The notes beneath the pieces are model-generated. The model searched no databases. It saw only the letters and a list, made by a program, of their open reading frames with translations, and was not told the origin of the DNA. Shown here in pieces: positions 6 to 46,220 of a DNA stretch of 64,000 nucleotides. Made by a program: the position numbers and the translations under genes. Location: positions 62,001 through 126,000 of the IMG/VR virus record IMGVR_UViG_3300033182_000980; one strand, given 5' to 3'. Every line of letters starts with the position of its first letter. Within the stretch, counting starts at the first letter, position 1.

Positions 6-1145
6 TTGGCTGGTCAAAAGACGCTAAAAGATGTGAGCGATACATTCAAGAAAAACAGTATCAGATCATTCAAAGCAATAGAAATCCACAAGAGCCAAGC
101 GTCTCTTAAATCGGTGATTCCCGTAGAGCTAAGGGCGTATTTACCCGACACAATCACGATTGATGTAGATGAAGAAGGGTACATCAAGAAGATTAACGAT
201 ATGTTCGGAAACAAGACCTACACTTTATCCGAAAAGATCAAGTCGCAGAAGAAGCTCATCAAAAAGTACAACACAATCGTTAAGCAGATTAAGAAGGATC
301 TCAAATCAAGAGATGAGAAGGCTAAACTCTCTGCAATCATCACTTCAATCATCATGGAAACAGGGATAAGGCCAGGAAAGATCGGTAATGGGATTGTAGA
401 AACAGTAGATGATCAAGAGGTGGAAGTTGAAACATTCGGAGCGATCACGCTGAACCCTTCCCATGTTAACTTTGTGAGGGAGAACTTTGCCGAGCTTAGT
501 TTCAGAGGAAAGATGGGGACTGTAAACACTGCGGCTATCTCTAACTCTGCAATCGTCAAAGTGCTGAAAGATTATGTAGACAATGCTCTTGAGTCTGGAT
601 CTGATTACATCTTCATCACAAGTGAGGGTGAACAGTTCACCTATCAAGACCTTGTGAGATACTTTAGGATTAACTTTAAGGGATTTAAGATCACTGACTT
701 TAGGAAGCTAAGAGCAACCCAAGAAGTTTTTGACGGACTCCAAGAAGAAAGAGACTCAATGCTTCGGAGGATTAAAGAAGTAGCAGAGCTTGAGACAGAG
801 GAGTTGACCCAGCGTGTTGTTGAGATCGTAGCCGAAACGATCAATAAAGCACACGAGAGAGCACAAGTGGCTTTGAGCCATGACAGTGGGTCTACCACTA
901 AGAAATCATACATTAACCCAGAAGTGCTTTTAAGGTTCTTGAGTACAGCTTCTATGCAAAGCACTCTTAAAGAGAGCATTACAACAGGTAAGACAAAGCT
1001 CCACTTTGATCCAATGATGTTTGTTCGAGAGGCAACTCGGACAGCAAGTATGCTTATTTCTGCATCTGGAAGAACGCTAGAGAGTATAGATACAATCGTT
1101 GATATGTTAGAGCATATTTTTGACAATGGTATAGTAGAAGGTTGA
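6..1145 (+). CDS. Type IB DNA topoisomerase (frame open to the window edge, may be 5'-truncated)
   Basis: Poxvirus/bacterial TopIB catalytic residues in order: ETGIRPG (R), FRGK (K), TDFRKLRAT (R), LSH (H), KKSYI (Y nucleophile); FGAITL resembles vaccinia YGLTTL. Confidence 0.85.
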   Translation: MAGQKTLKDVSDTFKKNSIRSFKAIEIHKSQASLKSVIPVELRAYLPDTITIDVDEEGYIKKINDMFGNKTYTLSEKIKSQKKLIKKYNTIVKQIKKDLKSRDEKAKLSAIITSIIMETGIRPGKIGNGIVETVDDQEVEVETFGAITLNPSHVNFVRENFAELSFRGKMGTVNTAAISNSAIVKVLKDYVDNALESGSDYIFITSEGEQFTYQDLVRYFRINFKGFKITDFRKLRATQEVFDGLQEERDSMLRRIKEVAELETEELTQRVVEIVAETINKAHERAQVALSHDSGSTTKKSYINPEVLLRFLSTASMQSTLKESITTGKTKLHFDPMMFVREATRTASMLISASGRTLESIDTIVDMLEHIFDNGIVEG

Positions 1146-1167: not shown

Positions 1168-1791
1168 ATGACTAACATTAATGGCATCAAGAACGACCAT
1201 AATAAACAAAGAGGCAAGAACACCTTTGGTGGAGGGAATGAAAAATCTCTTTACATCCCAATGTCGGACATTGAGCAAGAGTTCATTGCTCGTCTTGTTG
1301 AACAGGGAGAAATCTTGGTTGAGTTTCATGGTTGGGGTACGGTTCAGCCTATCGTGACCTTTGGAGATAAGATCATCCATGCTCACATTAAAGTCTTGTT
1401 CCATAATGCACCGCCTCCTCCTGGCAAACCTGTTCCGTTCTTTGACATGGAGCTTCGGACTCAATCGGGGATCTGTCTATACAGACAAAAGATGCCGACA
1501 TCTTATGGGAACACACCAATCACCATCTCTAATGAAGTTGAGCTAGAGATGGTTTGGGATATAGCTCTCAAATATATTGATCCGAAGCTCATCAAGACGC
1601 TCATGCCACAGGTTACAGGGTTCACAACAAGACTTGAAGATCGGGATACTCACGACATCACGGTGACTGGTAATATGAAGCTCAATAAAGAGCAGATTAA
1701 GTCAGCTCATAGCCTTCATCAGAGCGAACAGAACATCAAAGTATATGATGAGAAGAAGCTCGCAGAGGCGATCAATAAAACCTCAAAGTAA
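1168..1791 (+). CDS. Hypothetical phage protein
   Basis: 207-aa ORF with GAGG RBS; no recognised motif. Confidence 0.7.
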   Translation: MTNINGIKNDHNKQRGKNTFGGGNEKSLYIPMSDIEQEFIARLVEQGEILVEFHGWGTVQPIVTFGDKIIHAHIKVLFHNAPPPPGKPVPFFDMELRTQSGICLYRQKMPTSYGNTPITISNEVELEMVWDIALKYIDPKLIKTLMPQVTGFTTRLEDRDTHDITVTGNMKLNKEQIKSAHSLHQSEQNIKVYDEKKLAEAINKTSK

Positions 1792-2130
1792 GACTCTATA
1801 GGGGTGATTATCCCAGGGCACTTCCTTAGCCCCCTTGGGTAAATCAACTCGCACCCTCTTATTGACATCTAAAAAGTAAACGACCTTCTTGCTAGGTAGC
1901 ACTTCATAATAGCATCCACTTAGCTGGTAAAGTTTCCACTTTAGATTTCTCTTGGCGAATAGAACTAAGCTACTAGGGAATAACTCTTCTAGTAGGTAGC
2001 CTTTTTCATCTTCATATTCTTTGATGTGGTTGTAGGTCTTTGATAACCCATCTCTTTCTACATAGATTGTTTCGTTCTTGTAGACTATAAAGGTATCATT
2101 CTCTGCCTTGTAGTTTAGGACTGTTTTCAT
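1783..2130 (-). CDS. Hypothetical protein
   Basis: 115-aa ORF filling the gap between + strand genes. Confidence 0.6.
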   Translation of the reverse strand: MKTVLNYKAENDTFIVYKNETIYVERDGLSKTYNHIKEYEDEKGYLLEELFPSSLVLFAKRNLKWKLYQLSGCYYEVLPSKKVVYFLDVNKRVRVDLPKGAKEVPWDNHPYRVLL

Positions 2131-2141
2131 AGGAAGCTCGC

Positions 2142-2807
2142 ATGAAAGTATTGATTATTAGCACAACCACACATAGGGATAAATCAACTAGTAAAATGGT
2201 ATTGAGCCACTTGTCCGACATACTCAATAAAGACCACGACATCGACTTCGTAGACGCAAACGACCTACATATTGTCCCCAACCTAAGCTGTTATTCTAGT
2301 GGGGGTAAAAACTGTGCAAGTAAAGACGCTGGTAAGTACAGATGTTGGGCACACAAGTTGAGCCATGAGAACCCCGATGAGTATAATGGCAAAGACGAGA
2401 TGGGAATCCTTTATGATGCCCTAAGCTGGTGCGACTTAGTAATATGGGGAACTAGCGTTCGATGGGGTAGTCATTCAGCTTTGATGCAGAAGATCATCGA
2501 GCGTATGAACACCCTAGAAAACCAGCAGACGGTTTATGGGGAGGAGAACCCTTTGAAGGGCAAAAAATGTGGTGTGGTTGTAACTGGACAACATTATAAA
2601 GCTCAACAGGTTGCTGAACACCTCATCACACAGTTCGGGTGGTTTGGGTTTAATGTAGACCCCTCTTATATGTTGACTTGGCAGAAATCACAAGACATAC
2701 ACCAAGAGCAAGAAGGTGATAACAACGATCCTCTTGAGGCATACCTCAAGTCTAAAGAGGGCAAAGTACAGGTAGAGAACTTCCTATCAAGCATGGAGAT
2801 CAAATGA
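2142..2807 (+). CDS. Flavodoxin-like NAD(P)H-dependent FMN reductase / iron-sulfur flavoprotein family
   Basis: MKVLIISTT start, Cys cluster CYSSGGKNC...C, DLVIWGTSVRWG, LKGKKCGVVVTG flavodoxin-fold pattern. Confidence 0.75.
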   Translation: MKVLIISTTTHRDKSTSKMVLSHLSDILNKDHDIDFVDANDLHIVPNLSCYSSGGKNCASKDAGKYRCWAHKLSHENPDEYNGKDEMGILYDALSWCDLVIWGTSVRWGSHSALMQKIIERMNTLENQQTVYGEENPLKGKKCGVVVTGQHYKAQQVAEHLITQFGWFGFNVDPSYMLTWQKSQDIHQEQEGDNNDPLEAYLKSKEGKVQVENFLSSMEIK

Positions 2808-3670
2808 GAATCGAAACAGACTTTAAGCTCGACTTTAAAGATGTGCTGTTTAAACCTAAAAGGTCTACCCTCACATCACGCAAAGAGGTGAATCTCACAA
2901 GGTCAATCAAGCTACCCCACAGTAAAAGGACTTGGGAAGGTGTGCCTATTGCTGCCGCTAACATGGACACTGTGGCTACCTTTGAGGCTGGTAAAGTCCT
3001 CACAAATCATCACATGATGGTATGCCTTCACAAACATTACACCGAAGAACAGTATGTGGATATATACGACTGGGTGTATTCCAATCAAGGATGTGGCTAC
3101 GCTCAATACTGGGCTTACTCTATGGGTATCTCCGATGAAGAGTTTGATCGTCTTGTGCGTATTCAAGATAAGACCAATGGGATGATCCTCACGATCTGTA
3201 TTGATGTAGCGAACGGATACACAGAGCGTTTCATTAAGTTTGTCGCTAGGGTAAGGGAAAAGTATCCACTCTCAATCATCATCGCAGGTAATGTGGTCAC
3301 GGCAGAAATCACAGAGCAGTTGATCCTTGCTGGTGCAGACATCGTAAAGTGCGGAATTGGCTCTGGGTGTTTCGTTGCTGGCACACCTATCCTCACCAAT
3401 AATGGACTCAAGCCGATTGAGGAAGTTGAGGTAGGGGATAAGGTAATGACTCACATGGGTCGTGAGCGTACTGTGACGAACACCTTTACCCATACCAATA
3501 AGAACCTACTCGTTAATGTGAATGGCATCAAAGCAACACCAAACCATGAGTTCTATGTGGTACACAAGTCAGACGCTGATAAGGTGAATGACGATAACAT
3601 CCATGAGTACGCAAAGTGGGTTCGGGCTGATGAGCTGACTAAAGAACACTTACTACTAGAGGTTCAATAG
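2804..3670 (+). CDS. guaC: GMP reductase N-terminal half fused to split-intein N part
   Basis: N-terminus MRIETDFKLDFKDVLFKPKRSTL matches E. coli-type GuaC; IDVANGY, IAGNVVT, GADIVKCGIGSG, then the intein start CFVAGT; ends at a TAG stop. Confidence 0.92.
   Translation: MRIETDFKLDFKDVLFKPKRSTLTSRKEVNLTRSIKLPHSKRTWEGVPIAAANMDTVATFEAGKVLTNHHMMVCLHKHYTEEQYVDIYDWVYSNQGCGYAQYWAYSMGISDEEFDRLVRIQDKTNGMILTICIDVANGYTERFIKFVARVREKYPLSIIIAGNVVTAEITEQLILAGADIVKCGIGSGCFVAGTPILTNNGLKPIEEVEVGDKVMTHMGRERTVTNTFTHTNKNLLVNVNGIKATPNHEFYVVHKSDADKVNDDNIHEYAKWVRADELTKEHLLLEVQ
3368..3667 (+). mobile_element. Split intein N-fragment (IntN, 100 aa), IMPDH-1-like
   Basis: Block A CFVAGTPILT, GLKPIEEVEVGDKV, block B TPNHEFYV; ends EVQ-stop. 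Confidence 0.9.
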
Positions 3671-3679
3671 TTTATTTAT
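3668..3679 (+). promoter_or_regulatory. Motif A (TAGTTTnTTTAT), putative late promoter
   Basis: TAGTTTATTTAT; its TAG is the guaC-N stop; upstream of the endonuclease. Confidence 0.55.
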
Positions 3680-3722
3680 ATCTCTGATTATGATGAAACT
3701 AGGTATCGGTAGAGGTAGTGTC

Positions 3723-4667
3723 ATGCTCATCACAATCAGAAAAAATAATATGCTTGTCAAAGGCTTCTCCAAAGAGGGGCGATGCAACTATGCAATGCTT
3801 GAGGACGGTTCTAAGATACAGTCCTCAAAGCTAGGTAGTATCTCTATTGAGTGTTCAGAGTGTTCTAAGCAAAGCCACATACAATGGAGAACTGCCCTGT
3901 TAAGTAAGCCTTACTTATGCCAATCCTGTGTTGTTTCTGGAGATCGTAATGGGTTCTTTGGTAAGACACACACAGAGGAGACTAAGAAAGCCCACTCTGA
4001 CTTTATGTGTGGGAGATACACGGGTGAGGATAATGCTTTTTATGGCAAGACTCACACTAAAGAAGCGAGGGAAAAGATACGCTCGGCACAAACATGGCAA
4101 AAAGGATCATCTAATCCGTTCTTTGGTAAGACTCATTCGCCAGATACGATTGAAAAGATCATTGAGGGGAACAAAGCCTATCGGGAGTCTCTAACGGAGG
4201 AACAAAGAGCTAAAACCTCAAAAAAGTTGAGTCGTACTCAAAAGGATTTCCAAAAGAGCAACCCAAAATACTACAGGGAAATAAAGCAAAGGGGAGCATA
4301 CGCTTCGGCTAAGTCTCACAAGAAGTACAAGATGAACAAGCTAGAAGAAAAGGTTTATCAAGTGCTTCAAGATCACTTTACAGATATGTTCAAGTACACA
4401 GTCATCTTAGGTCATTTGCAGTTTGACTTTGGGTGTAAGAGTAAGCGTATCTTGATTGAGGTTCAAGGGGATTATTGGCATGGAAACCCTGCTCTCTATG
4501 GAGAGGGTAAAAGACCCTTGAACAACATACAGATCAACAAACAAGCTAAGGATAAGGTAAAACAATCATGGTGTGAGGACCATGACTTTACCCTACTCAC
4601 ATTTTGGGAAAGCGATATAAACGCAGACCCTAACATCATCTTAAGAGGAGTTTTAGATGTTATCTAA
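3723..4667 (+). CDS. Free-standing homing endonuclease: three NUMOD3 motifs plus C-terminal Vsr/DUF559-like nuclease
   Basis: [42 protein letters not shown]; FDF...[12 protein letters not shown]...WE. Start at 3723 chosen from the GAGGT RBS (ORF open from 3690). Confidence 0.85.
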
Positions 4668-4791
4668 GTACAAGCTAGTAGAAATCAATACCCTAGAGAC
4701 TGAGCCTAACCCATCGGGTATCGCCTATGACCTTGAGGTCGAGGAGGATCACTCATATACGATTGGGGAGAATAGGACTGTAGTTCATAAC
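4657..4791 (+). mobile_element. Split intein C-fragment (IntC, 45 aa)
   Basis: Block [13 protein letters not shown] and block G VVHN followed by a +1 Ser. Confidence 0.9.
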
Positions 4792-5286
4792 TCTGCTTGT
4801 ACGACTCGTATTCAAGCAGGTGTGGGTTATCCACAGTTAAGTGCTGTGATTGAGTGTGCCGATGCCGCTCATGGCTTGGGTGGTCGCATCATGTCGGATG
4901 GAGGCTGTACCTGTCCTGGTGATGTAGCTAAGGCATTTGGAGGAGGTGCTGATTTCGTCATGCTTGGGGGTATGCTTGCAGGACATACCGAGAACCTTAG
5001 ACTGGATGACGAGGGTAACGCACTCTTCTATGGTATGTCCTCTGACACAGCGATGGAGAAGTATCATGGAGGGGTTAATGACTATCGTTCATCCGAGGGA
5101 CGAACCGTAGCCATTGAGCGTAGAGGTCCGATTAAAGATACTCTTCAAGATATACTTGGGGGTATTAGATCAACCTGTACTTATATTGGAGCGAGTGAGC
5201 TTAGAGAGCTGAGTAAATGCACGACTTTTATTCGTGTTCGTCAGCAGTATAATCCAGTGTTTGAGTCTAAGACGATTAAGAGCTAA
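4657..5286 (+). CDS. guaC: Split-intein C part fused to GMP reductase C-terminal half
   Basis: Own RBS (AGAGGAG) and ATG; after VVHN comes SACTTR...[22 protein letters not shown]...[28 protein letters not shown], the canonical GuaC sequence. Confidence 0.92.
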
Positions 5287-5290
5287 GTTA

Positions 5291-5340
5291 TAGTTTATTT
5301 ATGTATTCCTCTGTAAGAACCTTATCTTTACAGAGGAATA
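5291..5340 (+). promoter_or_regulatory. Motif A plus RBS-sequestering hairpin
   Basis: TAGTTTATTTAT 5291-5302; perfect 13-bp inverted repeat 5304-5316/5328-5340 containing the GAGGA RBS. Confidence 0.65.
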
Positions 5341-5344
5341 CATC

Positions 5345-5938
5345 ATGTATCTAAAGAGAGCATTACTTAACCTTGAGCGTAGGGTTGCTGATCTTGAAGC
5401 TGACCTTCAGCCTCAACTTGGTAAACCTGGTGGAGTCAAGCACACAACACAGCGTATTGACGAAGCCTTACCCGACGGGAGCCCGAAAGAAATCGAGCTG
5501 ATAGATACAGTCAATAAGGGTCAAGGGATCTCTAATCAAGACGCAAGGATTGTGTATCGCTTTGACGACTGTAATCCAGCTCTTGACGGAACGACTATGG
5601 TTAAGGGTTTTTGTGTCTCTTCTCATGGTCAGTTTAGAATGGACCAAAGAGGGATTACAGTTCGCAAGATCCAAGAGTTCTTCTTTAATCTGGAGAAGTA
5701 CCTAGAAAGGAATGAGACTAATCGGAGGACTTTCGACTTGCGAGACTCAATCAATAGAGGAATGGAAACCAAGTGGACAGATGAGCGTAGTAACAATCTC
5801 ACAGTAGTCTTTAGACTTGAGGGAGACAGTGCCAAGATCATCACTACTTATTACAAGAATAAGAAAGACCCGATCTTGACCGAGGAGAAAGACTACTCAC
5901 GCTTTATTCGACCTAGAGGTCGTAGACGAAGGCGTTAG
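5345..5938 (+). CDS. Putative BECR/DUF4258-like RNase-fold protein with a divergent coiled-coil leader
   Basis: N-terminal LLNLERRVADLEA resembles the leader; C-terminal SSHGQFRMDQRGIT...VVFRL...KIITTYY resembles the DUF4258 pattern. Confidence 0.45.
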   Translation: MYLKRALLNLERRVADLEADLQPQLGKPGGVKHTTQRIDEALPDGSPKEIELIDTVNKGQGISNQDARIVYRFDDCNPALDGTTMVKGFCVSSHGQFRMDQRGITVRKIQEFFFNLEKYLERNETNRRTFDLRDSINRGMETKWTDERSNNLTVVFRLEGDSAKIITTYYKNKKDPILTEEKDYSRFIRPRGRRRRR

Positions 5939-6342
5939 TAAGCACCTGCTATGTGTTCGATTTCTTCTTCGACCTTCATAGCAAGCATATACCAACGCTC
6001 TGCAAGGTCTTGGTAGTAGGGGTCTTTGCCTCTACTGAAAGAGGGCATCTTTTCAAGCTCACGCTCCATTTCTTGCATAGCCTTTAAGACTTTTTCTGCT
6101 GACCTACGAACAGGCGTAGAAGCTGTTCTCTGCTTGCTCTTGTACTCATTCGTGAGCCGATACTCTTTTACGAGAGCTTCATATTCTTTGTTCTGCGATG
6201 GGGTAAGACGATCTTGGTCTTCAAGGAGTTGAAGCTCATCTAACCTTGCTCTATCTTTTTTAGACATAGTGCGAGCTTGTCTCTCAAGGCGAGCAATACG
6301 ACCCTCAAGTTCACGAATTATTTCTGAAGCTGATCTTCTCAT
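5935..6342 (-). CDS. MRRSASE-leader protein 1 (unknown cargo)
   Basis: MRRSASEIIRELEGRIARLERQA; GGAGAA RBS. Confidence 0.85.
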   Translation of the reverse strand: MRRSASEIIRELEGRIARLERQARTMSKKDRARLDELQLLEDQDRLTPSQNKEYEALVKEYRLTNEYKSKQRTASTPVRRSAEKVLKAMQEMERELEKMPSFSRGKDPYYQDLAERWYMLAMKVEEEIEHIAGAY

Positions 6343-6386
6343 AGTTTGTTCTCCATTTGGTTAATATGACCACCAATGAAAAACCT

Positions 6387-6398
6387 ATAAAAGACCTA
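6387..6398 (-). promoter_or_regulatory. Motif A variant
   Basis: TAGGTCTTTTAT upstream of leader protein 1. Confidence 0.45.
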
Positions 6399-6401
6399 CA
6401 A

Positions 6402-6455
6402 ATAAAAAATGTCTCTTAAACACCCTCTGTGGCTTAGTGAGGGGTCTAAGAGACA
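6402..6455 (-). terminator. Intrinsic terminator downstream of the SSB-like gene
   Basis: Inverted repeat TGTCTCTTA (6410-6418)/TAAGAGACA (6447-6455) with inner CCCTC/GAGGG, followed by a T-run on the minus strand. Confidence 0.6.
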
Positions 6456-6528
6456 TAGAGCCTTTAGTTGAATCAAAGGCTATTGAGCGTATTCAACCAT
6501 GACTTAAGTCATGGGTCAAGGCTTTTTC

Positions 6529-7245
6529 TTAGAGCATACCGTCAAGGATCTCATCTGCATCAAAGCTAGAGTTGAAACCACCACCGCTGTTGCCTGTAGG
6601 CGAACCAACCGAACCACTCATCTTCTCACGAATCTGATCGAGAGTAAGGTCTTGAGCGATGTCATTTTGGATGTTTGCGTGGATAGGCTTAGCCGCTTCC
6701 ATACAAGTATTGAACATATCAGAACCCTTGTCGCTCAAGGTCTTGAACAGAGACTCTTTACAAGGAGCGAAAGTCATCTTGTGGAACTGTGGATCAGTCA
6801 CGGTGATTGAGATGTCATGCTGACTCAAAGGGAACTCGGAGTTGATAGACTCAAGCTGACGATACTTATCGAGTGAGAACACCCAAGTCTTGACCTCAAA
6901 CTCACCATTGGCGAAGCGAGCCTTATCAAGCGTACCATTAGCGTCTGTCGGCCAGAAGATGAGAGTAGTAGCGATTGAGGTCTTTGAGGGATTACCCGCG
7001 ATCTTCTGATACTCTGGACCATGATCGAGGAAGTATCCGACATCCTTGTGATAGAGGCGGCGACCACCCTTGAACGAGGGGTTGGTCGGATTACCATTTG
7101 CGTCCTCGAACTGAACAGCGTTGTCCTCAAGACCTGGAAGAGCCACGAAAGTCACACGAAACTTTCCCTTTTGTGGCTTCCAACGAACCTTACCACCTGA
7201 GAGGATTGGTGAAGTAGAACCGAGTGTGAAGTCTGAAAAACCCAT
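6529..7245 (-). CDS. Putative phage single-stranded DNA-binding protein
   Basis: Beta-rich core with aromatic residues, Gly/Ser linker and acidic C-terminal tail FDADEILDGML typical of phage SSBs. Confidence 0.5.
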   Translation of the reverse strand: MGFSDFTLGSTSPILSGGKVRWKPQKGKFRVTFVALPGLEDNAVQFEDANGNPTNPSFKGGRRLYHKDVGYFLDHGPEYQKIAGNPSKTSIATTLIFWPTDANGTLDKARFANGEFEVKTWVFSLDKYRQLESINSEFPLSQHDISITVTDPQFHKMTFAPCKESLFKTLSDKGSDMFNTCMEAAKPIHANIQNDIAQDLTLDQIREKMSGSVGSPTGNSGGGFNSSFDADEILDGML

Positions 7246-7425
7246 AGGGCATTCTCCTGTATATATTGCCTGTCGGCAGTTAAAGTTAAGAGCGTTAGCG
7301 AGTCATCCGAAGTGAGTGGCTCTGTTGCTCACATACTCTTATACGATATACACAAGATGTTGCCGAACTTTTCCCAAAAAACTTTCAGAGAAATAGTAAG
7401 TGCCCGAAAGAGTTGAAGAAAAACC

Positions 7426-18904: not shown

Positions 18905-19554
18905 TTATGAAATACTTTAACCACCCACCCACAATGCGTAGAGTTTATGATGACGAAGAAGCTCAAACTCAACATCGGAAAAACGCACAAGCCGATTTCT
19001 ATGGTGAGATTACGGTAAGCGACAACCACATCTACCTCTATCAAGGCATCTCTCCCAAGGCTGTTATGGAGATGGGCATCGCTATCAAGTCCATTGGTCA
19101 ACAGATCATCAACATGGTCACTGATCTTGGACTCTCCCAAGCACCTGCTATCCACCTTCACATTAACTCTGGTGGTGGGTGTGCCTTTAGTGGTCTTGCT
19201 GGAGCGAGCCATATCTTAGACTCGGACATCCCTGTGTTCACCTATGTAGAGGGTTCAGCGGCTTCTGCGGCCACGATCATGTCTTGTGTCGGGGCTAAAC
19301 GCTTCATCACAGAGCATAGCTTCATGCTCATTCACCAGATCAGCACTGGTGTATGGGGTACATACGAGAACCTAAACGATGAGAAAGAGTCTATGGACTC
19401 GCTCATGGAGATGTTGGAGTCAATCTACCTCAAGAACACCAAGATGAAGAAGAAGCAACTCAAAGAGCTTCTAAAGCGTGATCTCTGGATGAACCCTAAG
19501 AAGTGTCTTGAGCTTGGATTGGTAGACGAGATCATCAAGTACGAGCGTGTTTAA
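18901..19554 (+). CDS. clpP: ClpP-like serine protease
   Basis: IHLHINSGGG, EGSAASAATIM (catalytic Ser), SFMLIHQ (His), RDLWMNPKKCLELGLVDEI. Confidence 0.85.
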   Translation: MIMKYFNHPPTMRRVYDDEEAQTQHRKNAQADFYGEITVSDNHIYLYQGISPKAVMEMGIAIKSIGQQIINMVTDLGLSQAPAIHLHINSGGGCAFSGLAGASHILDSDIPVFTYVEGSAASAATIMSCVGAKRFITEHSFMLIHQISTGVWGTYENLNDEKESMDSLMEMLESIYLKNTKMKKKQLKELLKRDLWMNPKKCLELGLVDEIIKYERV

Positions 19555-19566: not shown

Positions 19567-19605
19567 ATCACCCACATAATCAGACACTCTATTCACACTA
19601 GGAGA

Positions 19606-20145
19606 TTGATTATGTGGGATAATGATGACATCGTATTCGGGTCGTTTCAAAAGACCTCAAGCATGGACGCTGTTCTTGAGACTAAGATTTCTGATCTAAC
19701 AGATCGTGGTCGCAAGAACAAAGCTACAGCCGCCAACTTTGAAGATGGTATGCGTGTAGTGGCTCACACTAATAATGGTGTAGTCATTCCTGGTCAGCTC
19801 CCGACTGCTGGTACAAAGGGAACAGTCGTATCTGTTAAAACTGCAACAGGTGATGTGACCTCCCTTGATGGAGAGGTGTTTGTTCAGTTTGACGGACGCA
19901 ACAAGATTGATCGGATTCCAGCTAACTTTCTGCGTGTGGCAAGCATGAAGGTTGCGAGCATTGATGATCACTTCATCGTGCTAAGTGGACCTAATCTTTC
20001 AGCGAGCTTTATGAGCGTAGCAGGTGGTGAGTCAACCCTAGTGCATAAGGCGACCCAAGACCTTTGGAGCATGAAGGTGTCTGACGATGGGTCATATGAT
20101 GTAGAGCGTCTGTTTGACGACAATGGTGATCCACTTAAACTTTGA
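19606..20145 (+). CDS. Hypothetical, putative virion protein
   Basis: Preceded by TAGTTTCTTTAT and AGGAG; contains KTS/S and RVA/SMKVA/S linkers. Confidence 0.7.
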   Translation: MIMWDNDDIVFGSFQKTSSMDAVLETKISDLTDRGRKNKATAANFEDGMRVVAHTNNGVVIPGQLPTAGTKGTVVSVKTATGDVTSLDGEVFVQFDGRNKIDRIPANFLRVASMKVASIDDHFIVLSGPNLSASFMSVAGGESTLVHKATQDLWSMKVSDDGSYDVERLFDDNGDPLKL

Positions 20146-20200
20146 TTTTTAGTTATTAAATACCTCCTTTTTCCCAAACTGAACAGGAGGTATTTTTCAG

Positions 20201-20368
20201 ATGAGACTGACCTTTATATTATTATTGTGCTGTACTCTTTGCTGTAGTGAGGACTCGGCTAAACCTGTACGACTAGAAATCGAAGAGACAAATAAAGGTC
20301 GGAGAAAGAGGCACAAAGGGGATCTCCTTAACCTCTTGCATAGAGCCTCTTTGGTGAGGGTTGTTTAA
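20201..20368 (+). CDS. Small (55 aa) signal-peptide/lipoprotein-like protein not in the ORF track
   Basis: AGGAGG RBS; MRLTFILLLCCTLCCSEDS... hydrophobic N-terminus with Cys, basic C-terminus; TAA at 20366-20368. Confidence 0.55.
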   Translation: MRLTFILLLCCTLCCSEDSAKPVRLEIEETNKGRRKRHKGDLLNLLHRASLVRVV

Positions 20369-33384: not shown

Positions 33385-33434
33385 TGACTCTCCATTGGTG
33401 ATCTTTAACCCTTAACCGACAATGGAGAACTATT

Positions 33435-33779
33435 ATGAGAAGATCAGCAAGCGAAGTCTTAAGAAACTTAGAAATGCGTATCGCAAGACTTGAGAAGCAA
33501 GCAGGATTCACTGTAGGGCAAGAAGTACCTTATACACTAAGAACCCTTAAAAAAGTGATGTCAGAGGGTTATGGATTCAAAGTGATAAGTGTAGGGGGGG
33601 GTTTGAGTGATACTCTTGAATACAGTTTAACCTCCGAGCAAGTGGCTAAGATCAGTTCTAGGGGGAAGGTTGATGTTATGCTAAAAAACATTCAACAAGA
33701 GCTAAAGTTCTCGATAGAGCCTAACCTAAAGAGGAAGGGTCGTAAAAACTTCATTGTCCTCACAGAAAACCCTGCTTAA
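33435..33779 (+). CDS. MRRSASE-leader protein 2
   Basis: MRRSASEVLRNLEMRIARLEKQA. Confidence 0.85.
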   Translation: MRRSASEVLRNLEMRIARLEKQAGFTVGQEVPYTLRTLKKVMSEGYGFKVISVGGGLSDTLEYSLTSEQVAKISSRGKVDVMLKNIQQELKFSIEPNLKRKGRKNFIVLTENPA

Positions 33780-33872: not shown

Positions 33873-33922
33873 AGGTTCTCCATTGGTGATCTTTTAACCC
33901 TTTAACCTCATGGAGAAATAAA

Positions 33923-34249
33923 ATGAGAAGATCAGCATCAGAAATTATCAGAAATCTTGAGCAAAGAATTGCTCGTCTTGAAAGTGAAAATGCGAAGACC
34001 GCAGGTCTTATGACAGTCCACACCTTAGATACAAGTAGTCGTGAAATACCTTACGGCACAACTGAATCAGAAGTTATGAACACTCAAGACCTTCCAAGTT
34101 TGCTTTTAAAGTCTGAAGTGACCATTACAAGAGACGGACTACAAGCAATAGATAGAGACGGTCGAGTCCACACGATTGAAATCTCAAAAGACGAGCTTAT
34201 TAAAGCTCTACTACCTCTAGCTAGACCTACATCTGTTAAGATGAAATAA
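33923..34249 (+). CDS. MRRSASE-leader protein 3
   Basis: MRRSASEIIRNLEQRIARLESENAKTA. Confidence 0.85.
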   Translation: MRRSASEIIRNLEQRIARLESENAKTAGLMTVHTLDTSSREIPYGTTESEVMNTQDLPSLLLKSEVTITRDGLQAIDRDGRVHTIEISKDELIKALLPLARPTSVKMK

Positions 34250-43784: not shown

Positions 43785-43835
43785 ACCTACCAATAAGTGA
43801 TCATTAAACCCTTAACCTTGAATGGAGAACCGATT

Positions 43836-44306
43836 ATGAGAAGATCAGCTTCAGAAATCATCAGTGACCTTGAAAATCGTATTGCACGACTTGAAGGTAA
43901 GACAGCCAACCACAATGCGAACATTAAGATCTCAACTTCCTGGTATACAGGCAGTCCAAGAGATGATGTGAGAATGATGACCTTGACTGATATAGTTGAT
44001 GAAGCTCAATCTGATTTTGAGTCTCAACAAAATCAACTTAAGGAAGATATTGAGCTAGGAGACGCTGAACGAGGTACTAACTTTAATGTCTACATTGACA
44101 TTGGATATGGTCAACTTCGCATTAACTCTGGTGCTGATGATGGAACTACTAACTATCAAGCTGGATGTGTTTGTTGTCTTTGGTCTGCTTTTGTAGCGGC
44201 AGGTCTTGCCGAGATGTCCTATCCTAATGCTTCAAAAAAACTAGCTTCCATGCTAAAAACTCGGTTAAGAGGTTTCTCGGTATCTGTGAATATAGAGAAG
44301 GCTTAA
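43836..44306 (+). CDS. MRRSASE-leader protein 4
   Basis: MRRSASEIISDLENRIARLEGKTA; GGAGAA RBS places the start at 43836. Confidence 0.85.
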   Translation: MRRSASEIISDLENRIARLEGKTANHNANIKISTSWYTGSPRDDVRMMTLTDIVDEAQSDFESQQNQLKEDIELGDAERGTNFNVYIDIGYGQLRINSGADDGTTNYQAGCVCCLWSAFVAAGLAEMSYPNASKKLASMLKTRLRGFSVSVNIEKA

Positions 44307-45305: not shown

Positions 45306-45341
45306 CACTATACTTATATGATCAAACTAAGGAGAACTAAC

Positions 45342-46220
45342 ATGAGAAGATCAGCTAGTGAGATGATTAGAGATCTTGAGCGTAGGGTCGCTCGTCTCGA
45401 AAGACAGGCTAAAAAAGAACCACAGTGGATTACTTGGGCTTTAGAGGTTTTGGTGGAGAGTCGTGAAACTCAAGCCAAAAGCAGAGATGATCTTGAAGAG
45501 AGAAGAAACGGTCAAGTATGGGAATACTATCAAGGTCGTGATGATGTGATCTTGGTTTCTTCTGATGCAGATCGGAGTGATTACATCATTTACGAGAGTG
45601 ATGACGCTAAGATCGCTTTGAACAACGAGATCATGGAGGACATTCTTGAAAATAAGCCTTTAGAACAAATCATTCGGCATATGCCCTGGACAAAAGACAT
45701 TCTTTTAAGCACACTCAGTTTGCGTTATGGAGATCTTCAGATGTGGGCTTCCGAATGGGCAGAGGCTACTGTTGAAGGTTTAGATGATGACGAGCTTATT
45801 GAGAGGGCTGGTATGGAAGATGAGAAAGCAGAGTATGAAGAAGAAAGGGATTACTACGAGAAAAGAATGGATCCAGAAGTAGACGGTAAAATTAATCCTC
45901 TTTATTCGGACAACGCAGAAGTTATGGTCTTTGACTATAATAATATGCTTAACGACCTACCCGAAAATGCCAGAACTAAGTTGGTGGCAGAAGCAGAAGA
46001 AGAGATTAGTACGGCTCTTAAACAGTACCCTTATGAGTATCTTACAGAAGAAATGGGTTGGAGTGAGGGTCAAGTTATTCAAGCATTTGGTTCTCCCGAC
46101 AAAGACGAAATCGAAAGCATCATTGATCAGTTAGGTGCTTCCGAGAGAGAGTTTCAGTATCTCGCACCTAGTGGGAAAAGGCTTAGGACTAAACTCAACT
46201 ATGTGATTGAAGAGATCTAA
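45342..46220 (+). CDS. MRRSASE-leader protein 5 (highly acidic cargo)
   Basis: MRRSASEMIRDLERRVARLERQA; start 45342 by RBS. Confidence 0.85.
   Translation: MRRSASEMIRDLERRVARLERQAKKEPQWITWALEVLVESRETQAKSRDDLEERRNGQVWEYYQGRDDVILVSSDADRSDYIIYESDDAKIALNNEIMEDILENKPLEQIIRHMPWTKDILLSTLSLRYGDLQMWASEWAEATVEGLDDDELIERAGMEDEKAEYEEERDYYEKRMDPEVDGKINPLYSDNAEVMVFDYNNMLNDLPENARTKLVAEAEEEISTALKQYPYEYLTEEMGWSEGQVIQAFGSPDKDEIESIIDQLGASEREFQYLAPSGKRLRTKLNYVIEEI

What the first reader, a model, noticed from the sequence alone, without database searches (positions are those of the whole stretch)
5291..5938. RBS-locking hairpin directly after a late motif guards a putative RNase-fold gene
Seen: perfect 13-bp inverted repeat TATTCCTCTGTAA (5304-5316)/TTACAGAGGAATA (5328-5340) whose 3' arm is the RBS of the 5345 gene; its 5' arm starts 2 nt after motif A. 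Established: T4 e, soc and I-TevI are silenced on read-through transcripts by such hairpins and released when late transcription starts inside the 5' arm. Inference: the gene product (DUF4258/BECR-like, with a divergent leader) is toxic and is made only late, possibly packaged to attack RNA in the next host.
Basis: partly seen in the sequence, partly recalled or inferred. Interest (0 to 1): 0.6.

Follow-up and report, generated by a model that had tools for sequence, protein, structure and literature searches.

The report
Ribosome-site hairpin lock after a phage promoter motif
A perfect 16-bp RNA hairpin hides the ribosome-binding site of a small RNase-fold gene in an uncultured 376-kb phage, and it is one of at least 18 such locks that this phage places after a promoter motif wherever an upstream gene could read through.

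Summary
The repeat is longer than reported: 16 bp, 5301-5316 / 5328-5343. It is the best inverted repeat in the window and buries the Shine-Dalgarno GAGG of gene 5345-5938 (dG -22.7 kcal/mol, z -8.1).

Motif A (TTwATAGTTTnTTTAT) is a real promoter-like element. The 375,691-bp phage genome has about 80 copies, including ones before baseplate and tail genes.

The lock is not specific to this gene. 18 of 72 motif-A genes have one. Locks are concentrated where a co-oriented upstream ORF ends at the motif (15/39 against 3/33, p=0.006).

Orthologues behave the same way. Five that follow a co-oriented gene keep the lock, with compensatory changes. Five with a divergent upstream neighbour lack it.

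This favours a T4 e/soc/I-TevI-type silencing of read-through transcripts. The decisive step is unshown: motif-A transcripts would have to start at or after about 5310, and no RNA data could be found.

The protein is a solo DUF4258/BECR-like module. The same module heads polyvalent, probably virion-delivered, proteins of other phages. Its "divergent leader" is a variant of an N-terminal helix shared by about 30 proteins of this phage.

Toxicity and packaging remain inferences. Verdict: a new member of a known kind, of moderate interest.

The parts
4657..5286 (+). C-terminal piece of the fractured GMP reductase/IMPDH-family gene (guaC). It is the co-oriented upstream gene whose transcripts can read into the hairpin. 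Its stop codon TAA is at 5284-5286.
   Evidence: Pfam IMPDH, 3e-33. No terminator-like site lies between it and 5345.
5287..5302 (+). Motif A, a promoter-like element with consensus TTwATAGTTTnTTTAT. The invariant final T is at 5302.
   Evidence: 82 PWM sites genome-wide against 5.4 expected. They lie 27-63 nt upstream of start codons, in the sense orientation.
5301..5316 (+). 5' arm of the hairpin. The anti-Shine-Dalgarno CCTC is at 5308-5311.
5317..5327 (+). Loop of 11 nt. A G5317-U5327 pair and two inner pairs are possible.
5328..5343 (+). 3' arm of the hairpin. It contains the Shine-Dalgarno GAGGA at 5333-5337.
5345..5938 (+). Gene for a 197-aa protein (stop codon 5936-5938).
   Evidence: ORF. 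18 full-length homologues at 56-98% identity, all with the same start.
5345..5404 (+). Residues 1-20: an N-terminal helix that is a divergent copy of the leader shared by about 30 proteins of this genome.
   Evidence: The leader HMM gives E=0.02 at residues 9-18, the best hit outside the family. Orthologue P0015 gives E=9e-7 at the same place. The model shows a helix at residues 2-18.
5396..5599 (+). Residues 18-85: the ADLxPxLGxPGG linker and a small helical subdomain. This part is conserved together with the BECR core, also in polyvalent proteins.
   Evidence: Invariant L25, G26, G30 and Y71 in 70 sequences. Module boundaries in L004-L017.
5600..5872 (+). Residues 86-176: DUF4258/BECR-like core with strand-helix-helix-three-strand topology. 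Candidate catalytic residues are H94 (5624-5626) and T167 (5843-5845).
   Evidence: Pfam PF14076 at residues 92-169; 53 of 70 relatives also match. AF2 pLDDT 89-96 over this part. The structural neighbours are RelE/ParE/HigB/BrnT/CdiA-CT/colicin D, all at Z 4.4 or less.
5912..5935 (+). Residues 190-197: a basic tail (Arg run).
   Evidence: Conserved in most homologues.
5935..6342 (-). Convergent neighbour gene (135 aa), a canonical member of the leader family.
   Evidence: Leader HMM E=3.7e-14. No Pfam or PHROG match.

Best explanation
The hairpin at 5301-5343 is an RNA-level lock on the translation start of gene 5345-5938. On transcripts that enter from the co-oriented upstream guaC operon, the CU-rich tract right after motif A pairs with the Shine-Dalgarno sequence, so ribosomes cannot load. 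The gene is translated only from transcripts that begin at its own motif-A promoter, provided these start inside or beyond the 5' arm (predicted at window 5310 or later). This is the logic known from T4 genes e, soc, 49 and I-TevI. This uncultured 376-kb phage applies it to a whole promoter class rather than to this one gene.

The product is a solo DUF4258/Ntox49-type BECR-fold protein, a probable metal-independent RNase. It has His94 in the first core helix and Thr167 in the last strand. It carries an N-terminal helix shared with about 30 other motif-A-driven proteins and a C-terminal arginine tail. It is most likely made with the late or virion gene set, and possibly loaded into the particle for delivery to the next host.

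Shown here: the hairpin, the motif class, the dependence on upstream context, the compensatory conservation, and the family and fold assignment. Inferred: the transcription start, the timing, the RNase activity, the toxicity and the packaging.
For: - Hairpin: 16 bp and perfect, dG -22.7, z -8.1.
- Motif A: 82 sites against 5.4 expected, oriented and spaced like a promoter. It precedes a baseplate gene (phrog_975/43) and a 2084-aa tail protein (phrog_9648).
- Context in this genome: 18 of 72 motif-A genes have the Shine-Dalgarno paired with the tract 0 to +15 nt after the motif. These are 15/39 sites where a co-oriented ORF of 80 aa or more ends at the motif, against 3/33 elsewhere (Fisher p=0.0057). 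Strong locks are 10/39 against 1/33 (p=0.0088). Median dG is -10.1 against -5.2 (p=0.00085).
- Context in orthologues: with a co-oriented upstream gene the lock is kept although the arms differ in sequence. Values are window -22.7, L084 -14.9, L090 -20.0, L093 -18.2 and L021 -14.5 kcal/mol. With a divergent upstream gene there is no lock between motif and ATG (L086, L091, L092, L094, L088: -0.3 to -6.3, z above -1.4).
- Compensatory change: between the window and L084 (96% protein identity) there are two double changes, U-A to C-G and C-G to U-A.
- No terminator: there is no T-run after the stem and no terminator-like hit.
- T4 precedent: PMC3014915.
- Protein: Pfam DUF4258. The literature places DUF4258 in the BECR fold (PMC11980606; bioRxiv 10.64898/2026.08.28.747851). 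AF2 mean pLDDT is 84.5. The neighbour lists are dominated by RelE/ParE-type toxins.
- Module context: the same module sits in 640-1366-aa proteins with ART-PolyVal, SWIM and HExxH motifs. Iyer et al. predict this class to be packaged and injected (PMC5512222).
- Leader.
Against: - The transcription start is unknown. Motif A ends at 5302, before the arm rather than inside it as in T4.
- With a start 6-7 nt after the motif, the usual distance for a -10-like element, the window's Shine-Dalgarno would stay paired. Its unpaired probability is 0.00 at +6, 0.20 at +8 and 0.52 at +10.
- Purines are preferred directly after the motif (A in 22/43 sites at +1). The motif's ending TTTATAG resembles the end of motif B and of T7-type promoters, where transcription starts at once. 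That would put the whole arm into the transcript.
- No RNA run was listed, and no RNA polymerase or sigma gene was recognised.
- 'Late' rests on two structural genes. Motif A also precedes a topoisomerase-like gene and a homing endonuclease.
- The structural Z-scores are low (4.4 or less).
- Sense and antisense folding energies do not differ significantly (p=0.15), so RNA-level selection is not proven by strand asymmetry.
- The lock thresholds were chosen after looking at the data.
Confidence: 0.5

Rival explanations
1. The whole hairpin is part of the motif-A transcript, with the start 1-3 nt after the motif. It acts as a 5'-terminal stem-loop that stabilises the mRNA and throttles translation. 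The result would be a low, constant yield, or dependence on a phage-made activator, helicase or cleavage (as with Mu Com and mom).
For: In at least 8 sites the stems begin exactly at the last AT of the motif. Purines are preferred at +1/+2 after the motif, and the motif's end resembles the end of motif B and of T7-type promoters. A start at +6/+7 would not open the window's lock. A low yield would suit a toxic or low-copy cargo protein.
Against: Orthologues with a divergent upstream neighbour do without any such stem. Genome-wide, the locks depend on an abutting co-oriented ORF (p=0.006), which a purely intrinsic mRNA feature would not. A baseplate gene, needed in quantity, carries one of the strongest locks (-24.9). 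The apparent exact start of the stems at the motif may only reflect that the arm cannot extend into constrained sequence.
Confidence: 0.25
2. The hairpin serves the upstream gene. It would be a terminator, a 3'-end protecting stem or an RNase processing site for guaC-operon transcripts, and its overlap with the ribosome site would be a by-product of the short spacer.
For: The association with co-oriented upstream ORFs is equally predicted by this view. A 12-16-bp stem in a 40-nt spacer must overlap the Shine-Dalgarno region.
Against: No T-run follows the stem, and there is no terminator-like hit. The stem lies downstream of the next gene's promoter motif, so as a terminator it would also stop that promoter's own transcripts. 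The 5' partner is always the CU-rich anti-Shine-Dalgarno tract, and in some sites the AUG is the paired element instead. The lock is kept in L093 and L021, where the upstream gene is not guaC.
Confidence: 0.12
3. The inverted repeat works as DNA: an operator for a dimeric regulator, or a cruciform or hairpin promoter element of the N4 type.
For: It is a perfect palindrome next to a promoter motif. Sense and antisense folding energies are similar.
Against: Arm sequences differ completely between sites and between orthologues while pairing is kept. Loops are 9-22 nt. Several stems contain G-U pairs that exist only in the sense RNA, such as the sites at genome positions 261282, 250502 and 189960. 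Only about a quarter of motif-A sites have a stem.
Confidence: 0.03

Closest known systems
T4 read-through translational locks of genes e (lysozyme), soc, 49 and I-TevI; also Aeh1 mobE (review PMC3014915)
   Same: A hairpin pairs the Shine-Dalgarno sequence or AUG with an upstream segment. The gene lies directly downstream of a co-oriented, differently timed transcription unit. A phage-specific promoter lies at the hairpin. The structure is kept by compensatory change in relatives.
   Different: In T4 the late promoter (TATAAATA) is encoded within the 5' strand of the structure and the mapped starts lack that strand. Here the motif (TTwATAGTTTnTTTAT) ends just before the arm and the start site is unmapped. 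Here the device covers at least 18 genes (about 25% of the promoter class), in a phage lineage with no cultured relative.
DUF4258 (PF14076) / Ntox49 toxins of the BECR (RelE/ParE, colicin-like) fold
   Same: The HMM match is at the gathering threshold. The predicted topology is strand-helix-helix-three strands. The H(G/A)QxRMxxRGI helix motif is present, with His in the first helix and Thr in the last strand.
   Different: There is no conserved adjacent antitoxin or immunity gene. The core is preceded by a conserved 65-residue helical subdomain and an N-terminal leader, and followed by an arginine tail. It is encoded by a lytic-type jumbo phage. No member of DUF4258 has been characterised experimentally (PMC11980606).
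PBECR domains of phage polyvalent proteins (Iyer et al. 2017, PMC5512222)
   Same: It is a phage BECR module that occurs both solo and fused in very large multi-domain proteins carrying ART-PolyVal, zincin-like HExxH and SWIM elements. The active-site configuration is His/Thr. The predicted role is an effector delivered with the DNA.
   Different: Neither the window protein nor any of the 70 aligned relatives produced a Pfam match other than DUF4258 (plus two stray single hits), so no PBECR family was hit. In the fused relatives the module is N-terminal and sometimes duplicated.
T4 capsid-targeting sequence of internal proteins (IPI-III, Alt); from my own knowledge
   Same: A short N-terminal sequence is shared by many otherwise unrelated, co-regulated proteins of one phage.
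   Different: The leader here is a 25-residue amphipathic helix with no sequence similarity to the T4 one. No cleavage site, protease dependence or capsid location has been shown.

Membership tests
T4-type read-through translational lock | A stable hairpin that pairs the Shine-Dalgarno sequence or AUG with an upstream segment | tested here: met
   16 bp, dG -22.7, z -8.1. GAGG at 5333-5336 pairs with 5308-5311.
T4-type read-through translational lock | A co-oriented upstream transcription unit with no terminator before the gene | tested here: met
   guaC-C ends at 5286, 1 nt before the motif. No terminator-like site was found. Actual read-through RNA was not observed.
T4-type read-through translational lock | The gene's own promoter gives transcripts that lack the 5' arm | not testable with these tools
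   The motif ends at 5302. Release needs a 5' end at about 5310 or later. No RNA run was listed. The polymerase is unidentified.
T4-type read-through translational lock | The promoter belongs to a later temporal class than the upstream unit | tested here: inconclusive
   Motif A precedes baseplate and tail genes. It also precedes topoisomerase-like and homing-endonuclease genes. A second class, motif B, clusters at the genome ends. There are no expression data.
T4-type read-through translational lock | The structure is kept in relatives by compensatory change and is tied to the read-through context | tested here: met
   5 of 5 co-oriented orthologues are locked and 5 of 5 divergent ones are not. 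Genome-wide p=0.006. Two double changes separate the window from L084.
DUF4258 (PF14076) / BECR fold | Profile match at or above the curated threshold | tested here: met
   25.1 bits against a cut-off of 25, at residues 92-169. 53 of 70 relatives match at E of 0.01 or less; best 1.4e-6.
DUF4258 (PF14076) / BECR fold | RelE/ParE-like core topology | tested here: met
   AF2 elements are E88-91, H93-102, H106-122, H127-137, E142-146, E152-159 and E162-170, with pLDDT 89-96. Most of the 42 neighbours with Z of 2 or more are BECR toxins, but the best Z is only 4.4. The atlas search returns DUF4258 and ParE clusters.
DUF4258 (PF14076) / BECR fold | His in the first core helix and Ser/Thr in a late strand (PMC5512222) | tested here: met
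   H94 is invariant in 70 sequences. T167 is invariant in the close set and lies in strand 162-170.
DUF4258 (PF14076) / BECR fold | Ribonuclease activity or toxicity | not testable with these tools
The family itself is uncharacterised.
Type II toxin-antitoxin module | A conserved adjacent antitoxin or immunity gene | tested here: not met
   The neighbours differ between L084, L086, L088, L090, L092, L093 and L094.
PBECR of polyvalent proteins | The module occurs fused in polyvalent proteins | tested here: met
   L004-L017 encode 424-1366-aa proteins with ART-PolyVal, SWIM and HExxH elements. The module is duplicated in L007 and L009.
PBECR of polyvalent proteins | Match to a Pfam PBECR profile | tested here: not met
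   Only DUF4258 is hit, apart from two stray single-member matches.
Intrinsic (rho-independent) terminator | A GC-rich stem followed by a T-run | tested here: not met
   The stem is followed by CATGTATC and is not in the terminator scan.
Capsid-targeting leader (T4 CTS-like) | A short N-terminal sequence shared by many unrelated proteins of one phage | tested here: met
   30 proteins match at E of 2e-6 or less. This protein scores E=0.02 and its orthologue P0015 scores 9e-7, both at the same position.
Capsid-targeting leader (T4 CTS-like) | Directs the cargo into the prohead and is cleaved by the prohead protease | not testable with these tools
   There is no virion proteome. The leader-bearing proteins have no Pfam match.

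The most novel reading that the evidence does not exclude
A clade of uncultured aquatic jumbo phages (this 376-kb genome, the 312-kb G001 and several metagenome contigs) may run a genome-wide 'insulated late cassette' system with three linked features. First, a 16-nt promoter whose 5' half doubles as the stop codon of the upstream gene. Second, a built-in anti-Shine-Dalgarno tract placed exactly between the promoter and the start site, so that every read-through copy is untranslatable. Third, a common 25-residue N-terminal leader that sends about 30 otherwise unrelated small proteins, a solo BECR RNase among them, to one destination, most plausibly the capsid, as an injected effector arsenal. 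That would be a cargo-loading system analogous to the T4 capsid-targeting sequence but far larger. It would be the unfused counterpart of polyvalent proteins.
Probability: 0.2. Interest if true: 0.75.

Novelty: new member of a known kind. Interest (0 to 1): 0.42.

Why it matters
If the start-site prediction holds, the T4 trick of silencing read-through copies of a gene is a general design rule that was reinvented with a different promoter in a deep-branching group of huge phages. It would apply to a quarter of one promoter class, not to a few T-even genes. That gives a sequence-only way to read promoter timing and transcript boundaries in uncultured phage genomes. The protein side links an uncharacterised toxin family (DUF4258/Ntox49) to phage-delivered effectors. 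It also exposes a shared leader that could mark the packaged proteome of phages nobody can grow.

Tried and rejected
- DNA and protein searches of the region against 50,697 deposited phages: no match. The nearest record by DNA polymerase is an unannotated 485-kb uncultured phage at 45% identity, so no mapped promoters could be borrowed.
- RNA evidence: no RNA run was listed for window 1500-7400.
- Search of the genome for T7-type RNA polymerase, the beta subunit and sigma-70 region 2: none found, and the PF00940 control rang nowhere, so that blank is weak. The four largest proteins (1902-3049 aa) have no PHROG match. A motif-B regex hit in a 910-aa protein is a family-A DNA polymerase.
- First crude test of lock enrichment (strict motif, 60-nt folds, crude gene calls): not significant (p=0.076). 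It was replaced by the PWM and upstream-context analysis.
- Sense versus antisense folding energy as a test of RNA-level selection: not significant (p=0.15).
- MAFFT alignment of five orthologous leaders did not put the arms in register beyond the window/L084 pair. No formal covariation count was made.
- PDB sequence search with the family profile: nothing meaningful. Foldseek against the PDB: no hit at E of 0.001 or less.
- Rfam and tRNA scans of the window: empty.
- Replication of the context rule in the related 312-kb genome G001: only 12 exact motif copies, too few for statistics, although one shows a lock and one a leader-like start.
- Pfam scan of ten leader-family proteins: no domains above their curated cut-offs.
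- Not attempted: the search of protein representatives, complex prediction and a second structure prediction, because no claim here rests on them.

Full report
**Source of the window.** The window is bases 62,001-126,000 of a 375,691-bp IMG/VR virus record judged complete. The record has 44-45% G+C. It has no DNA or protein match for this region among 50,697 deposited phages. By DNA polymerase, its nearest record is an unannotated 485-kb uncultured phage at 45% identity. It is therefore an uncultured jumbo phage. Contigs with near-identical genes come from lake, estuary and ocean metagenomes.

**The observation.**
- Complementarity continues beyond the reported 13 nt to 16 perfect pairs, 5301-5316 with 5328-5343, around an 11-nt loop.
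- It is the best inverted repeat in the 64-kb window.
- From the motif end to the ATG the RNA folds at -22.7 kcal/mol, against -5.3 +/- 2.1 for shuffles (z -8.1).
- GAGG at 5333-5336, 8 nt before the ATG at 5345, pairs with CCTC at 5308-5311.
- The stem is followed by CATGTATC, not a T-run. The terminator scan does not report it.

**Motif A.** K-mer enrichment upstream of ORFs shows two strong motif classes.
- Motif A has the 16-nt consensus TTwATAGTTTnTTTAT. Eleven of its positions are conserved in at least 41 of 43 sites, six of them invariant.
- A weight matrix finds 82 sites at 12 bits or more, against 5.4 in shuffled sequence. Of these, 72 have an ORF with a Shine-Dalgarno sequence starting 22-114 nt downstream on the same strand, mostly 27-63 nt.
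- It precedes a baseplate-wedge-like gene and a 2084-aa tail protein. It also precedes a topoisomerase-IB-like gene and the homing endonuclease inside guaC.
- Motif B (GTAACCCCTTATCTATA, 59 copies) clusters near the genome ends in front of small genes.
- Calling motif A 'late' is therefore reasonable but unproven.
- The motif often contains the stop codon (TAA or TAG) of the upstream gene.

**The lock is a class feature.** In 18 of the 72 motif-A genes, the Shine-Dalgarno region pairs with the G-poor, CU-rich tract that lies 0 to +15 nt after the motif's last T.
- Other sites bury the AUG instead, for example window 19571-19618. A further lock with a degenerate motif is at 20158-20195.
- The locks are strongly tied to context. 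They occur at 15 of 39 sites where a co-oriented ORF of 80 aa or more ends at the motif, against 3 of 33 other sites (Fisher p=0.0057).
- Strong locks number 10 of 39 against 1 of 33 (p=0.0088). Median folding energy is -10.1 against -5.2 kcal/mol (p=0.00085).
- An earlier, cruder test was not significant. The thresholds were set after inspecting the data, so these p-values are indicative only.

**Orthologues.** Eighteen full-length homologues (56-98% identity) exist in metagenomes, and I recovered DNA for ten loci.
- Where the upstream gene is co-oriented, motif A is followed at once by a hairpin that sequesters the Shine-Dalgarno sequence, and the arms differ in sequence between loci. The upstream gene is guaC in L084 and L090, and another gene in L093 and L021.
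- The folding energies there are -14.9, -20.0, -18.2 and -14.5 kcal/mol, with z from -2.1 to -6.1.
- Between the window and L084 (96% protein identity), two pairs changed on both sides (U-A to C-G, and C-G to U-A), tracking a change of the Shine-Dalgarno from GAGGAA to AAGGAG.
- Where the upstream neighbour is divergent (L086, L091, L092, L094, L088), the segment from motif to ATG is unstructured (-0.3 to -6.3 kcal/mol, z above -1.4).
- In four of those loci (L086, L091, L092, L094), two motif-A copies face each other in an 18-22-bp palindrome that includes both ribosome sites. The anti-Shine-Dalgarno tract then lies upstream of the promoter.

**Mechanism.** The context dependence points to a role on transcripts that arrive from upstream. 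This is the T4 e/soc/49/I-TevI logic (PMC3014915).
- A terminator or 3'-end role for guaC is less likely. The stem has no T-run, it lies downstream of the next promoter, it always involves the ribosome site, and it persists behind other upstream genes.
- The unresolved point is the start site. In T4 the late promoter lies within the 5' strand of the structure. Here it ends 0-6 nt before the arm.
- Partition-function folds with progressively shorter 5' ends show that the locks open only when the RNA begins 8-12 nt or more after the motif. For the window, the unpaired probability of the Shine-Dalgarno is 0.00 at +6, 0.20 at +8 and 0.52 at +10, which puts the required start at about 5310-5312 or later.
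- The purine preference directly after the motif, and the resemblance of TTTATAG to the end of motif B, argue for an earlier start. That would put the whole hairpin into the mRNA, which is rival 1.
- No RNA run was listed and no polymerase or sigma gene was recognised.
- I give the read-through lock 0.5, the 5'-terminal structure 0.25, an upstream-gene role 0.12 and a DNA-level role 0.03.

**The protein.** Pfam DUF4258 matches at the threshold (25.1 against 25 bits, residues 92-169). It also matches 53 of 70 relatives.
- The literature places DUF4258 in the BECR (RelE/ParE or colicin-like) fold, notes its overlap with Ntox49, and says no member has been characterised.
- An AlphaFold model built on a 70-sequence alignment has mean pLDDT 84.5, and 89-96 from residue 31 to 170.
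- Foldseek and VIA-align give only weak scores (E of 0.1 or more; Z of 4.4 or less). Yet the lists consist almost wholly of ParE, RelE, HigB, YoeB, BrnT, MqsR, YafQ, CdiA-CT and colicin D, aligned to residues 84-175. The ESM atlas returns DUF4258 and ParE clusters.
- H94, Q96, R98, M99, D100 and R102 are invariant across 70 sequences. T167 lies in the last strand. This fits the His/Thr configuration described for phage BECR domains (PMC5512222).
- No conserved neighbouring gene could serve as an antitoxin.

**Wider family and the 'leader'.** tblastn-based locus searches found the same roughly 160-residue module in proteins of 424-1366 aa.
- The module starts at an ADLxPPLGxPGG motif. It sits at the N-terminus of most of these proteins, is internal in a few, and is present twice in L007 and L009.
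- These proteins carry ART-PolyVal, SWIM-finger and HExxH elements. They are polyvalent proteins, a class predicted to be packaged and injected.
- Residues 18-85 are thus part of the conserved module, not a divergent leader.
- Residues 1-20 resemble an N-terminal helix (consensus MRRSASE-[VI]-I-x-x-LE-x-R-[IV]-ARLE-[KR]-QA). In 27 proteins it lies within the first 40 residues, and in three more it is internal (30 proteins at E of 2e-6 or less). At least 18 of them sit under a strict motif A.
- The window protein is the best hit outside that family (E=0.02, residues 9-18). All its orthologues hit at the same position, and P0015 scores E=9e-7.
- The convergent neighbour 5935-6342 is a canonical member. 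The leader proteins have no Pfam domains.
- A shared leader, a shared promoter, an arginine tail and the polyvalent-protein kinship make virion loading plausible. I put it at about 0.4. Nothing here shows it.

**Verdict.** The fold assignment holds at modest strength. It is a new member of a known kind of translational control, in a lineage with no cultured relative, with a possibly more interesting leader-family story attached.

Noticed in passing
window 2804-5286: guaC (GMP reductase/IMPDH family) is fractured into three reading frames. 2804-3670 holds the N-half plus a Hint N-part. 3690-4667 is a free-standing NUMOD3 + DUF559 (Vsr-like) homing endonuclease with its own motif A at 3664-3679. 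4657-5286 holds the C-half. Relatives show the other states: an intact 352-aa gene (L084, L090) and a 494-aa gene with a contiguous mini-intein (L086). This matches the IMPDH-type 'fractured genes' of Dassa et al. 2009 (PMC2677866).
   Followed up: partly
genome-wide; in the window e.g. 5935-6342(-), 33435-33779, 33923-34249, 43836-44306, 45318-46220: About 30 proteins share a 25-residue N-terminal helix (MRRSASE..LE.R.ARLE.QA) and have unrelated, unannotated C-termini. In three proteins the motif is internal. Most are driven by motif A. The related 312-kb phage G001 has a leader-like start too (L128).
   Followed up: partly
genome 19-31 kb, 58 kb, 171-176 kb, 213-216 kb, 330-362 kb; window 12512, 29833(-), 30536: A second promoter-like class, motif B (GTAACCCCTTATCTATA, 59 copies), has a T7-like look. 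It clusters near the genome ends before small genes. It is often followed by a stem-loop that does not involve the ribosome site.
   Followed up: partly
window 33385-33430, 33873-33918, 43785-43830 and paralogous leaders elsewhere: The 5' leaders of leader-family genes share a conserved loop element (GGTGATCT...TTAACCCTTAACC) between the anti-Shine-Dalgarno and Shine-Dalgarno arms. It may be a regulator binding site or a start region.
   Followed up: no
L086 4930-4995, L091 20-75, L092 1435-1495, L094 1440-1495: In relatives, two motif-A copies face each other and form 18-22-bp palindromes that include the ribosome sites of both divergent genes.
   Followed up: partly
window 19571-19618 and 20158-20195: Two further locks lie in the window. 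One buries the AUG of the gene at 19612, after the motif A at 19551. The other buries the Shine-Dalgarno of a gene starting at 20202, after a degenerate motif.
   Followed up: partly
whole genome (G000): No T7-type polymerase, beta subunit or sigma-70 region 2 was detected. The four largest proteins (3049, 2421, 2176 and 1902 aa) match no PHROG. The transcription machinery behind two sharply defined promoter classes is unknown.
   Followed up: partly
L005, L007, L009, L010, L013 (polyvalent proteins): A short motif (R-V/L-A-A/x-R-Y/F-L) recurs just before the ADLxPPLG start of the module, at other domain junctions and at C-termini. It may mark processing or docking sites.
   Followed up: no
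window 6-1145 (5'-open); L084 801-2225: A topoisomerase-IB-like gene (PF01028 in the L084 orthologue) sits under a motif-A promoter, which is unusual company for baseplate and tail genes.
   Followed up: no
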